Positions 27,499 through 30,611 of a DNA stretch of 64,000 nt are shown piece after piece. Numbering within the stretch: position 1 is the stretch's first letter; each line of letters begins with the position of its first letter. The notes beneath the pieces were generated by a model. It saw only the letters and a list, made by a program, of their open reading frames with translations, did no database searches and was not told where the DNA came from. This DNA is from Octopus sinensis (lineage: Eukaryota), in the NCBI RefSeq assembly GCF_006345805.1, contig NC_043006.1, positions 79,980,001-80,044,000 on the forward strand, given 5' to 3'. The position numbers and the translations under genes were made by a program.

Positions 27499-29456
27499 AT
27501 GTCTTTGAAAATGGAAACAGTTTTTGCATTGGTTGTAGTTTGTCGTTTATTGTTCTCAAATATTGTAACATATGCAGATAACTTCAACAACTGTAGCCCA
27601 GGTTTGTGCTCTGATCCTCCCACTCATGACACATCAGAACACTGTTCGTGTCGTCCAGACTGTTACATCTACATGGAATGTTGTTCTGTCATGATTAATA
27701 AGAGCACTTCTAATCACAAACATTCCTATCCATCACTATATTACAGCTGTAGAACATTCGGCAAACGTTATGATCGTAAAACTTTGACCGTTGACCGCCT
27801 AACAATGATGTTACGGAGTATGTGAACAACTGCGAAAATCCTGACTCAGATGATCAACTACAAAACATACCCGCTTTTGGTAAAACAAGTAAAATACTCT
27901 ATAGAAACCTGTATTGTGCTCTGTGTCATGAAGAAGAATTTATTCTTTGGAATCTTTTATATGGATGCGACTCCATCTCTGATGTAAGCTTTGAAAATAT
28001 AACAAATTATCTCAAGAAGGAAATGTGTTGGGCAGATGTGAGACCTCCAGAAGATTTGAAGAAATATTTGTATTCTTGTATTCCATTTATTTCGAGTTGT
28101 CCACAAGATAGTAATAAAGAACAAACGGTGGCATGTGAGTCTGAGCCAATGGCGTTAATATATGTAAATAGGGTGTTTTACAAAAATAATGACTGTGCCA
28201 AATGTAATGGGGTTTTAGCTCCGTGTAATCAATTTTATACTACTTTCGAGCCCTCGAAATTTATTCCTGCACTGACAATCCTATTCTATTACAACACGAA
28301 TTCCTTTATGGTAACAAATGAACAGACCAGTACAAATCGTATCGGTGTACTGAGGACCTCATGTCCAAAGGACGCTGTCTACGATATCAATACCAATCAA
28401 TGTCGACAAGTTATCTACCATCCTCCACTAAACTGTACGACAACAAGATTAAATGAATCTGAGTATTACATTACTAGTGATGGTCGTCTCTACTTAAATA
28501 ATACCCAACGTTTTCTAAACCAATCAGAATTCACTCGTGATTCTCAAGGTATAATAAGTATCTGTGGAAACAATGATACCAATAATATATCAAATATCAA
28601 TGGTATATCAAAATATTCCGTAGCTGAGAGCTATATCACATTAGTGGGACTCGTAATCTCTATTCCAGCTCTAGCAATCAGCATTATAGTCTATCTCTGT
28701 ATACCTGATCTCCGTTCCTTACCAGGTAAATTGCTCATTAGCCTTTTGTCAGCACTGTTTGTAGCTGAGCTTCTATTTCTTATCTCGTCACGAGTCACTA
28801 AATCTACAGTACTATGTACATCTTTAGCTGCAGTAATGCATTATTCGTTTCTAGCCACTTTCTTCTGGATGAATGTCATGTCATTTGATGCTTGGTACAC
28901 TTTCTCGGGACTCACACAAATTCGAAGTAAAGGAAAAAACACCAAGAGATTTGTATTTTGTTCCTTGTATGCTTGGATCTGTCCACTTGTAATAGTAACA
29001 GTATCACAAATATTTGAGTATATTCCTGGAAATCTTGGACTTTCTCCAGAGTATGCAAAAGATATTTGCTGGATTAAAAATGGAAAAAGTCTGCTATGGT
29101 TTTATTTAATCCCTGTAATGTTTATTTTATGTCTTAATATCATAGCGTTTACCCTCACCGCTAGAGGGTTCTATTTGGCACGCAAACTCTCTTCGAAATA
29201 TTTATCAAAACATAAGAAATTGGAGTTTATCATTTGCGTAAAACTATTCTTTATCATGGGGCTAACATGGACATTCGCATTTCTGTATACGTTTACAAGA
29301 ATTGAAGAATTTTCTCTATTATTTTGTATTTTAAACTCATTCGTTGGATTACTTATATGTTTATCGTTTCTATCAACAAGTATTGTTCGACGCAGTATTT
29401 TTCAGAATCTGCAAAAAATGACAAAAACATCCACAAAAGAATCTGTTGATATTTGA
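27499..29456 (+). pseudogene. Receptor copy B, type-1 ectodomain, pseudogene
   Basis: 10-bp deletion after 27783 relative to A; TGT>TGA at 27792-27794 in the native frame; last 14 codons lost at the junction with C; otherwise open 7TM. Confidence 0.88.
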
Positions 29457-30611
29457 TATATTATTGGTACCATTGTTTACACAGATACTTATTATACCTT
29501 GAGAATCACGAGTGAATTCTGATTGGTTCAGCAAACGTTGGGTATTATTTAAGTAGAGAAGATCATCATTAGTGACGTAATACTCAGATTCATTTAATTT
29601 TGTTGTCGTACAGTTTAGTGCAGGATGGTAGATGACTTGTCGACATTTCTTAACTCTCAAATCGTAGATAGCGTATTTTGGACAGGAGGGAGACTGCACA
29701 TATCTAGTTTCCGTTTTGTATACTCTATTTGTTACCTTTACAGTTTTGGTATCATAATCAAAAAGTATTGTTAGAGAAGAATATGTACTTTTAGCTTTAT
29801 CAAAATAATTCACTTCACATATATCACTGGAAAACCCGTTGCATATAGCACAACCTTTGTTTTTGTAAACTTTAAGAAATTTATATATGCCATTTACAAG
29901 GTAGTCTGTGCTAGACTCCATATATATCAATGCCATTGGCTCAGACTCACATGCCATTATTTGTTCCTTATTATTGTTATCTTGAGGACAATTCGAAATA
30001 TATGGTGTACAATGATGCAAATATTTGATCAAATATGATTGAAGCTCTACTGTTGGCATACAGCTATCCTTGAGATAATTTGATATATTTTCAAAGGTTA
30101 CATTAGAGATTATGTAGCAGTTATATACAAGATTCCAGAGAATGAATTCCTCTCCATAACACAGAGCACAATACAGGTTCCTGTAGAGTCTTTTACTTGT
30201 TTTACCAAAAGCAGGAATGATCTGAAGTTGATCCTCTGAGTCAGGATTTTCACAGTTGTTAACATACTCAATAACATCATGGTTATCTGGACAACGGTCA
30301 AACTGATAAGCATAATCATTACCAGCTTTTCGGCAACTCATAGTTGGGTAGTTTGTGATAGAAGAGGTCTTACTAATAATGTCAGAACAGCATCCATTGT
30401 AGAGGTAGCAGTCTGGTTGACACGAACAACGTTCCGATGCGCCATCTGAACACAAAGCTGGGCTACAATTGTTGAAGTATCCTGCATGTGTTATAACACT
30501 TGAGAACAAAAGAACGCAAACTAAAAACAATGTTTCCATTTTAAAAGATATAATTAATGATGCATGAATTAACCTTTCAAATCCTAATAGTTCTTTGATA
30601 TTTTGCTTCAC
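29373..30611 (-). CDS. Receptor copy C: open ORF with signal peptide and nearly complete type-2 ectodomain, no 7TM (388 aa from ATG 30539)
   Basis: No stops over about 364 ectodomain codons; homology to D ends at NNISNIN (29446), then 24 codons read antisense into B. The ORF-track start is GTG. Confidence 0.7.
   Translation of the reverse strand: MKQNIKELLGFERLIHASLIISFKMETLFLVCVLLFSSVITHAGYFNNCSPALCSDGASERCSCQPDCYLYNGCCSDIISKTSSITNYPTMSCRKAGNDYAYQFDRCPDNHDVIEYVNNCENPDSEDQLQIIPAFGKTSKRLYRNLYCALCYGEEFILWNLVYNCYIISNVTFENISNYLKDSCMPTVELQSYLIKYLHHCTPYISNCPQDNNNKEQIMACESEPMALIYMESSTDYLVNGIYKFLKVYKNKGCAICNGFSSDICEVNYFDKAKSTYSSLTILFDYDTKTVKVTNRVYKTETRYVQSPSCPKYAIYDLRVKKCRQVIYHPALNCTTTKLNESEYYVTNDDLLYLNNTQRLLNQSEFTRDSQGIISICVNNGTNNISNINRFFCGCFCHFLQILKNTASNNTC

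What the first reader, a model, noticed from the sequence alone, without database searches (positions are those of the whole stretch)
29373..30539. Copy C encodes an intact secreted ectodomain created by a 5-bp microhomology fusion
B (..TCTGTTGAT) and C (D-like ..CCATTGAT) join through TTGAT at 29446-29450. The deletion removed all of C's 7TM about 10 residues before TM1, leaving a stop-free signal peptide plus ectodomain with a 24-aa tail read antisense to B. C's upstream region is intact, whereas its partner B carries early lesions. Inference: a soluble decoy or secreted binder whose mRNA overlaps B in antisense.
Basis: partly seen in the sequence, partly recalled or inferred. Interest (0 to 1): 0.75.

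Follow-up and report, generated by a model that had tools for sequence, protein, structure and literature searches.

The report
Truncated octopus receptor gene fragment
One copy in a tandem cluster of octopus methuselah-like receptor genes lost its membrane-spanning half at a 5-bp microhomology breakpoint, leaving an open reading frame for the extracellular part alone; nothing available shows that it is used, so it is most likely a young gene relic.

Summary
The sequence observation holds. The window is Octopus sinensis CM016868.1:79,980,001-80,044,000 and carries four intronless copies of a receptor with a DUF8401 ectodomain and a 7tm_2 domain. B (+) and C (-) meet tail to tail. B homology ends at 29450, C homology starts at 29446, and TTGAT is shared (chance about 0.8%). 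C keeps a signal peptide and 365 native residues, then reads 23 residues antisense to B and stops. It has no transmembrane segment. B has a 10-nt deletion and a TGA early on.

Corrections: C is closest to paralogue F/LOC115216262 (96%) and E (93%), not D (90%). The tail is 23 aa, not 24. "Deletion" is unproven, because the junction is also the left edge of an inverted block of the array, so an inversion breakpoint fits equally.

The functional inference has no support. Ectodomain dN/dS is about 1-2 for C and also between intact paralogues, so that test cannot discriminate. C breaks none of 61 family-invariant positions, which fits either recent truncation or retained function. C lost its native poly(A) signals, gained four stray cysteines, has no gene model and has no syntenic O. 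vulgaris counterpart. Broken copies are common in the cluster.

Best reading: a young truncated gene relic. A secreted binder remains possible (about 10%).

The parts
29446..29450 (.). TTGAT microhomology shared by the end of B homology and the end of C homology. This is the rearrangement junction.
   Evidence: Alignments to A, D, E and F. The chance of 5 nt or more is 0.8%.
29446..30539 (-). C-derived coding DNA: signal peptide plus 365-residue DUF8401-type cysteine-rich ectodomain, cut about 10 residues before TM1.
   Evidence: ORF list. 89% identity to P0001, which carries PF28443 and PF00002. Family alignment: 0 of 61 invariant columns violated.
30480..30539 (-). Predicted signal peptide METLFLVCVLLFSSVITHAG.
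   Evidence: It is the only 19-residue window with Kyte-Doolittle above 1.6 in C. It is identical in D, E and F. No dedicated signal-peptide predictor was run.
29373..29445 (-). 23-codon non-native tail plus stop, read antisense to the last codons of B. It contains 4 Cys and is not long or hydrophobic enough for a TM segment.
30540..33822 (-). C upstream region, collinear with the upstream regions of F, E and O. vulgaris Ov2.
   Evidence: 93-96% identity. Proximal 420 bp has one 4-nt gap.
27499..29456 (+). Copy B (LOC118765232), an A-type pseudogene. It has a 10-nt deletion at 27782/27783 and TGA at 27792-27794. Its last 14 residues are replaced by one residue plus a stop read from C-derived DNA.
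28357..28600 (+). Left arm of a 244-nt, 90% complementary inverted repeat. The right arm (29446-29689) abuts the junction. The spacer is B's 7TM (845 nt).
29446..29689 (-). Right arm of that inverted repeat. It is the membrane-proximal ectodomain segment of C and differs from F at 1 of 246 positions.
29692..29900 (-). Hypervariable patch of the ectodomain. C's version is unique, about 13% from D, E and F.
147..2153 (+). Copy A, an intact 668-aa comparator (A/B ectodomain type).
   Evidence: 97% identity to the O. vulgaris orthologue.
49570..51558 (-). Copy D, an intact 662-aa comparator (C/D/E/F ectodomain type).

Best explanation
C is a truncated remnant of a methuselah-like family-B GPCR gene, that is, a young gene relic.

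Setting (shown): it sits in a tandem cluster that gains and loses copies.

Event (shown that it happened, mechanism inferred): one microhomology-mediated rearrangement joined the last codons of B to the pre-TM1 position of C on the opposite strand, using TTGAT. The event was either a deletion between two convergent copies or one breakpoint of an inversion of part of the array. It removed or separated C's 7TM, its 3' UTR and its poly(A) signals, and clipped B's C-terminus.

Why the ORF is still open (inferred): the event is recent relative to the low neutral divergence of this copy. C and F differ at only 5 synonymous sites, dS about 0.02. Nearly all of C's differences from its paralogues arose while it was still a working receptor.

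Consequence (inferred): no function for the remnant is needed to explain what is seen.
For: - Junction anatomy and non-random microhomology. The contig is continuous.
- Both partners are neighbouring members of one array, as expected for a local cellular rearrangement.
- C has no 7tm_2 domain and no hydrophobic segment after the signal peptide.
- Native poly(A) hexamers are lost.
- C violates 0 of 61 invariant columns despite 41 non-synonymous differences from F. About 7 hits are expected if those changes were unconstrained, so the divergence predates loss of constraint.
- C-F dS is 0.023, similar to the species-level divergence of about 2%. Few neutral hits are therefore expected since truncation.
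- Broken copies are frequent: B, the L003 copy, Ov3, the L005 copy and two in L006.
- No catalogued gene product.
- No counterpart in the syntenic O. vulgaris interval, where OvA is followed directly by the orthologue of F.
Against: - The 388-codon ORF is fully open while its partner B carries two lesions.
- All 24 mature-domain cysteines and the N-glycosylation sequons are retained.
- The upstream region is as conserved as that of intact paralogues.
- Stand-alone secreted relatives of this ectodomain exist in arachnids, so a soluble form is biologically plausible.
- The annotation also ignores the ectodomain of intact A: only the 352-aa 7TM part is catalogued. The lack of a C model is therefore weak evidence.
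- Expression was not testable.
Confidence: 0.65

Rival explanations
1. C is expressed from its intact promoter and makes a secreted ectodomain (SMB-like plus DUF8401) that binds the ligand of its parent receptors, acting as a decoy or soluble binder.
For: - Open ORF with a signal peptide and no TM segment.
- 0 of 61 invariant positions changed.
- Conserved upstream region.
- Stand-alone homologues without 7tm_2, conserved across species, occur in spiders and scorpions.
- Annotated isoforms that end just after TM1 exist in the family (P0007, P0010).
Against: - No selective signal specific to C.
- Native 3' end lost.
- A 23-residue hydrophobic tail with 4 extra cysteines could hinder folding or secretion.
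- No gene model and no orthologue at the syntenic place in O. vulgaris.
- High base rate of dead copies in the cluster.
- An open frame is not improbable for a young relic. I estimate roughly 0.1-0.5 even if truncation was as old as the C-F split.
Confidence: 0.12
2. The junction is an assembly or library artefact (a chimeric read carried into the contig), and B and C are both full-length in the animal.
For: - Only one assembly of this species is available and I could not inspect reads.
- The region is repeat-rich and was assembled from noisy long reads (from my own knowledge of the assembly, not checked here).
- The B/C/D block is absent at the syntenic place in O. vulgaris.
Against: - No gap at or near the junction.
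- Overlap-based misjoins occur through long homology, not 5 nt.
- Ligation chimeras join random loci without microhomology. Here the partners are neighbours and share 5 nt (P about 0.008).
- Fold-back read artefacts give perfect palindromes, but the arms here are 78-90% alike and of two different ectodomain types.
Confidence: 0.08
3. The relevant product is RNA. Read-through from B or C across the junction yields a transcript with a 244-nt, 90% complementary stem (28357-28600 / 29446-29689). This hairpin or antisense RNA could feed small-RNA silencing of the conserved membrane-proximal region shared by all paralogues.
For: - The inverted repeat abuts the junction with an 845-nt spacer.
- The arm sequence is the most conserved part of the family.
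Against: - No expression data.
- The repeat is an automatic by-product of joining two paralogues tail to tail.
- B is itself decaying.
- No Rfam or structure test was done, and none is expected to be informative.
Confidence: 0.03

Closest known systems
Octopus-specific methuselah-like GPCR expansion ('group 4' of Ritschard et al. 2019, PMC6408891)
   Same: A, B, D, E and F carry a 7tm_2 domain. NCBI names them Mth-like. They lie in a tandem cluster of at least 0.37 Mb on one chromosome. C derives from one such gene.
   Different: C lacks the 7TM altogether. The ectodomain is DUF8401 with an SMB-like start, not the Drosophila Methuselah ectodomain, and no Methuselah_N match was found. By sequence, the 7TM is closest to solved adhesion-GPCR structures.
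Unitary or duplicated pseudogenes and gene fragments in birth-and-death receptor arrays (for example olfactory or vomeronasal receptor clusters; from general knowledge)
   Same: Tandem array, mixed orientations, frequent frameshifted or truncated copies, and concerted evolution of part of the unit.
   Different: The remaining C frame has no disabling mutation yet, and the cut falls neatly between the ectodomain and TM1.
Gene-encoded soluble relatives of 7TM-receptor ectodomains (secreted Frizzled-related proteins; the soluble CRF receptor 2-alpha splice form; from general knowledge)
   Same: Predicted product is a signal peptide plus the receptor's cysteine-rich ligand-facing domain, without a membrane anchor. 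Stand-alone relatives of this same ectodomain occur in arachnids.
   Different: Those are conserved, expressed and shown to bind ligand. C has no evidence of expression, conservation or selection, and it carries a non-native cysteine-rich tail.
Microhomology-mediated end joining or replication-based template switching (MMEJ, FoSTeS/MMBIR) junctions (from general knowledge)
   Same: 5-nt microhomology, no filler bases, a local rearrangement in a segmentally duplicated region, and a junction at a change of orientation.
   Different: The mechanism cannot be specified. The second breakpoint or the deleted material was not seen, because CM016868.1:80,044,001-80,069,403 was not retrievable.

Membership tests
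Family-B (7tm_2) methuselah-like GPCR, octopus DUF8401 subgroup | 7tm_2 (PF00002) seven-helix domain | tested here: not met
   Pfam scan of C found no family. A and D score E = 4e-28 and 1e-29. C has no hydrophobic segment after the signal peptide.
Family-B (7tm_2) methuselah-like GPCR, octopus DUF8401 subgroup | DUF8401 (PF28443) cysteine-rich ectodomain with an N-terminal signal peptide | tested here: met
   C is 89% identical over 94% of its length to P0001, which carries PF28443. All invariant Cys are kept. PF28443 is not in the local Pfam copy, so this rests on homology.
Drosophila-type Methuselah | Methuselah N-terminal ectodomain fold or family | tested here: not met
   No Methuselah_N hit at E <= 0.1 for A, C or D. 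No PDB sequence relative for the ectodomain. The AF2 model was too poor for a fold test.
Pseudogene / gene relic | Loss of a domain essential to the parent's function | tested here: met
   The whole 7TM and C-terminus are missing beyond 29446.
Pseudogene / gene relic | Disabling mutations or relaxed constraint in the remaining sequence | tested here: inconclusive
   No stops or frameshifts. dN/dS is 1.0-2.1, but intact paralogues give 0.9-1.2. 0 of 61 invariant sites changed.
Pseudogene / gene relic | No transcript or protein | not testable with these tools
   No RNA-seq or proteome access. There is only the absence of a catalogued gene product. That is weak evidence, because the annotation also omits A's ectodomain.
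Secreted decoy / soluble receptor ectodomain | Signal peptide plus complete ligand-facing domain, with no membrane anchor | tested here: met
   Arachnid stand-alone homologues cover query residues from about 23 to about 303-350, so the core domain can exist alone.
Secreted decoy / soluble receptor ectodomain | Conservation of the soluble form across species or under purifying selection | tested here: not met
   No counterpart in the syntenic O. vulgaris interval, and no junction match in 10 related loci. There is no purifying signal.
Secreted decoy / soluble receptor ectodomain | Expressed, secreted and binds the receptor's ligand | not testable with these tools
   Needs RNA, protein and binding data. 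The ligand of the family is unknown.
Microhomology-mediated rearrangement junction | Short shared sequence at the join, no filler, both parents identifiable | tested here: met
   TTGAT at 29446-29450, with parents matched on each side at 94-96%. P(5 nt or more) = 0.008.
Microhomology-mediated rearrangement junction | Junction present in the organism's DNA (read or PCR support) | not testable with these tools
   No read data. Only the lack of gaps and arguments against artefact classes are available.

The most novel reading that the evidence does not exclude
A rearrangement has just produced a new secreted protein gene from a receptor. In this reading, C is transcribed from its intact promoter, is terminated in antisense B, and exports a soluble SMB/DUF8401 ectodomain with its own hypervariable patch. 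This would repeat in an octopus the stand-alone form of the domain seen in arachnids, caught near the moment of origin.
Probability: 0.1. Interest if true: 0.6.

Novelty: new member of a known kind. Interest (0 to 1): 0.25.

Why it matters
If C is only a relic, it is one more example of birth-and-death turnover in the octopus-specific methuselah-like receptor expansion. It is useful mainly as a clean, datable microhomology junction and as a marker of structural difference between O. sinensis and O. vulgaris.

If it proved to be expressed and secreted, it would be a rare observed case of a soluble binder arising in one step from a 7TM receptor. It would also give a handle on the unknown ligands of this family.

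The by-products may matter more than C itself:
- The family has a fast-evolving ectodomain (dN/dS about 1, with a hypervariable patch) joined to a homogenised, constrained 7TM block.
- Current annotation often omits the ectodomain.

Tried and rejected
- Exact-product look-up of C in public assemblies found nothing, so there is no independent assembly of the junction.
- I searched for the observed junction and for the predicted reciprocal inversion junction (reverse complement of B's tail joined to the 7TM start) in the window and nine related loci fetched by then (L001-L009). Only the window's own junction was found. L010, fetched later, was not scanned.
- The interval CM016868.1:80,044,001-80,069,403, where the array flips back to + orientation, could not be fetched. 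Deletion versus inversion therefore stays open.
- A search with the 7TM alone found no annotated 7TM-only protein that could be the reciprocal product.
- dN/dS of C against D, E and F is uninformative, because intact pairs behave the same.
- A search for a gene-conversion donor of C's hypervariable patch found none in about 330 kb of the two species.
- AlphaFold2 on a 14-sequence alignment gave mean pLDDT 37, so I ran no fold search.
- A PDB sequence search of the ectodomain gave only a non-significant SMB-domain hit, E = 0.72.
- A literature search for DUF8401 found no papers.
- Fold-back read artefact rejected: the arms are of two ectodomain types and 78-90% alike.
- Scaffold join rejected: no N runs.
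- Splicing of C to a downstream 7TM exon rejected: there is no 7TM on the - strand to the left of the junction in the window, and the family's coding regions are intronless.
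Full report
**Where the window comes from**

The window is Octopus sinensis chromosome record CM016868.1, bases 79,980,001-80,044,000. Locus L001, fetched through the NCBI protein of copy B, is identical to window 17499-39164. There are no N runs in the window.

**The gene family**

Four copies of one intronless gene lie in the window:

| Copy | Coordinates | Strand | State |
|---|---|---|---|
| A | 147-2153 | + | intact, 668 aa |
| B | 27499-29456 | + | broken |
| C | 29373-30539 | - | truncated |
| D | 49570-51558 | - | intact, 662 aa |

- A and D carry a 7tm_2 (secretin-family) domain after about 370 residues of cysteine-rich ectodomain. 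C matches no Pfam family in the local library.
- Database relatives are all from Octopus. They are named Mth-like, and their ectodomain is precomputed as PF28443/DUF8401.
- This is the octopus-specific methuselah-like expansion described by Ritschard et al. 2019 as 'group 4', said to form tandem clusters (PMC6408891).
- By sequence, the 7TM is closest to solved adhesion-GPCR structures. The ectodomain has no solved relative.
- Further copies fetched from the same chromosome place the cluster between 79.87 and 80.25 Mb, with mixed orientations.

**Checking the observation**

- In the + strand alignment, B follows A and D through ...AAAAGAATCTGTTGAT and then departs.
- In the - strand alignment, C follows D through ...ATATCAAATATCAA and then departs.
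- The two homologies overlap in TTGAT at 29446-29450, with no filler. The same end point (29446) is seen against E, F and the O. vulgaris copy.
- Random joins of stand-in parental sequences give 5 nt or more of microhomology in 0.8% of 200,000 trials.
- C's frame runs from the ATG at 30539 through 365 native residues ending NISNIN, about 10 residues before TM1. It then reads 23 residues (RFFCGCFCHFLQILKNTASNNTC) antisense to B and stops at 29373-29375.
- The only hydrophobic 19-mer in C is the N-terminal METLFLVCVLLFSSVITHAG.
- B's frame ends ...KESVDI, with its stop at 29454-29456 read from C-derived DNA. The two frames therefore overlap on opposite strands over 29373-29456.
- B has a 10-nt deletion at 27782/27783 and TGT>TGA at 27792-27794, in the conserved FDRC motif. 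NCBI's model of B (P0009) skips these lesions with ad hoc introns.
- C's upstream 800 bp is about 96% identical to E, F and Ov2, with one 4-nt gap in the proximal 420 bp.

**What C derives from**

C is closest to these copies:

| Comparator | Identity to C |
|---|---|
| F = LOC115216262 (about 70 kb to the right) | 96.0% over 1.56 kb |
| O. vulgaris Ov2 | 95.0% |
| E = LOC115216263 | 93.1% |
| D | 90.2% |

The divergence is mosaic. There is 1 mismatch in the last 246 bp before the junction, but about 13% divergence in a patch at 29692-29900. That patch differs between every pair of copies, and I found no donor for it.

**Synteny and the nature of the event**

- About 104 kb of the O. vulgaris cluster was fetched (L003, L004).
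- Window 1-25.6 kb (A and its downstream region) is collinear with L004 9021-33276 at about 98%.
- O. sinensis L009, which holds F, is collinear with L004 29238-48540 at 98.3-99.0%. F is therefore the orthologue of Ov2, and orthologous divergence is about 1.5-2%.
- In O. vulgaris, OvA is followed directly by Ov2. In O. sinensis about 67 kb lie between them, holding B (+), C (-), D (-) and more minus-oriented array.
- That 67-kb block is flanked by 2.4-3.6-kb direct repeats that are 96-98% alike.
- B, C and D are only 92-95% identical to any O. vulgaris unit.
- All four gene copies in L004 have one orientation. In O. sinensis the orientation flips exactly at the B|C junction. It flips back somewhere in 80,044,001-80,072,000.
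It could equally be one breakpoint of an inversion or a more complex rearrangement.
- The predicted reciprocal junction was not found in the window or in L001-L009, the loci held when that scan was run. The critical 25 kb could not be retrieved.
- No annotated 7TM-only protein fits the reciprocal product, which weakly favours a deletion.

**Is the junction real?**

I could not see reads. Several points argue against an artefact:

- The contig is continuous.
- A 5-nt overlap cannot arise from an overlap misjoin.
- Ligation chimeras are not expected to join neighbouring paralogues with microhomology.
- Fold-back artefacts give perfect palindromes. Here the arms belong to two ectodomain types, 78-90% alike.

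I put an artefact at about 8%.

**Is C functional?**

*Selection.* Ectodomain dN/dS values:

| Pair | dN/dS |
|---|---|
| C-F | 2.1 (5 synonymous, 41 non-synonymous differences) |
| C-E | 1.7 |
| C-D | 1.0 |
| F-E (both intact) | 1.2 |
| E-D (both intact) | 1.0 |
| F-D (both intact) | 0.93 |

The 7TM of intact copies gives 0.2-0.5. The ectodomain is fast-evolving throughout the family, so this test cannot separate a relic from a working gene.

*Conserved positions.* C changes none of the 61 columns that are invariant in 18 family members. About 7 changes would be expected if its 41 replacements had fallen at random. Most of C's divergence therefore arose under constraint, before truncation or under continuing function. 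Its number of private residues (11) lies between E (9) and D (19).

*Age.* C-F dS is about 0.02, which means few neutral mutations have had time to hit C. I estimate that an open frame has a probability of order 0.1-0.5 even if the cut is as old as the C-F split, and higher if the cut is younger. The intact ORF is therefore only mild evidence for function.

*Evidence against function:*
- The native poly(A) hexamers (+70, +82 and +92 after the stop in A and D) are gone. The next one is 247 nt into antisense B, at background density of 2.2 per kb.
- The tail adds four cysteines and a hydrophobic stretch to a domain with 24 conserved cysteines.
- No gene with this product is catalogued. This is weak evidence, because the catalogue also holds only the 7TM part of intact A (P0025).
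- The syntenic O. vulgaris interval lacks the copy.
- Broken copies are common in the cluster: at least 6 of about 19 sampled.

*Evidence for plausibility of a soluble form:*
- A full-library search found 129 distant relatives.
- These include 326-351-aa proteins of spiders and scorpions. They have a signal peptide and a weak SMB match but no 7tm_2. They are conserved between species and present as RefSeq models.
- A coral relative carries SMB plus 7tm_2.
- The ectodomain module can therefore exist on its own in nature.

**Verdict**

- Most likely (about 0.65): C is a young truncated gene relic at a microhomology-mediated rearrangement breakpoint in a birth-and-death receptor array.
- Secreted binder: about 0.12.
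- Assembly artefact: about 0.08.
- RNA-level role for the 244-nt inverted repeat created by the join: about 0.03.
- The remainder is unassigned.

This is a new member of a known kind and is of modest interest. The structure prediction failed (pLDDT 37), so nothing can be said about the fold.

Noticed in passing
window 1016-4034, 28357-29450, 47686-50707; L009 10854-14410: The paralogues are mosaics. From about 240 bp before TM1, through the 7TM and at least 1.9 kb of 3' flank, the copies are 94-96% identical. The 5' ectodomain is only 74-78% identical between the A/B type and the C/D/E/F type. This suggests concerted evolution of the 3' block.
   Followed up: partly
window 29692-29900 (C); equivalents at D 50711-50918 and L009 10640-10851: There is a hypervariable patch of the ectodomain, about 13% nt divergence between every pair, with a codon indel. 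Ectodomain dN/dS is about 1-2 even between intact genes, against 0.2-0.5 in the 7TM. It may be a ligand-facing surface under diversifying selection.
   Followed up: partly
window 147-2153: Copy A is an intact 668-aa ORF, but the only catalogued product from it is a 352-aa protein starting at an internal Met just before the 7TM (P0025). The same pattern holds for P0024 at 79.95 Mb. The annotation seems to miss the ectodomains of this family.
   Followed up: partly
window ~25600 to CM016868.1 ~80,072,000; direct repeats at window 21248-24913 and L009 4017-6685: A block of about 67 kb holding B, C, D and more minus-oriented array is present in O. sinensis between the orthologues of OvA and Ov2. 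It is absent there in O. vulgaris. It is flanked by direct repeats that are 96-98% alike. It could be a lineage-specific insertion, a deletion in O. vulgaris, or an assembly difference.
   Followed up: partly
L009 10001-11992 (O. sinensis F, P0028): F has Tyr (DRYRPT) where its O. vulgaris orthologue and all close paralogues have a conserved Cys (DRCRPT).
   Followed up: no
proteins P0047, P0073, P0099, P0143 (arachnids) and P0040 (coral Montipora): Distant relatives of the ectodomain occur as stand-alone, signal-peptide-bearing proteins of 326-351 aa in spiders and scorpions. In a coral the module is fused to 7tm_2. The module starts with a somatomedin-B-like cysteine motif.
   Followed up: partly
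window 5776-8159 (+) and 9743-13025 (-); also 40674-42106 (+) and 45229-45915 (-): Reverse-transcriptase-bearing retroelement copies lie here, two of them as a large inverted pair just downstream of A. The same pair is present in O. vulgaris.
   Followed up: no
window 20895-21422; L004 53829-54797: There is a long low-complexity ORF made of (RRRRRQ)n in O. sinensis. The related O. vulgaris position has a proline/alanine-rich repeat. Abundant (TA)n and (CA)n microsatellites lie around 30944-31000 and 33800-34200.
   Followed up: no
L004 57189-61386 (O. vulgaris Ov3); L003 10022-12020; L005 9654-11050; L006 635-2382 and 9248-11167: Further broken copies of the family occur here: frameshifted, 5'-truncated or mosaic. 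This shows a high pseudogene rate in the cluster in both species.
   Followed up: partly
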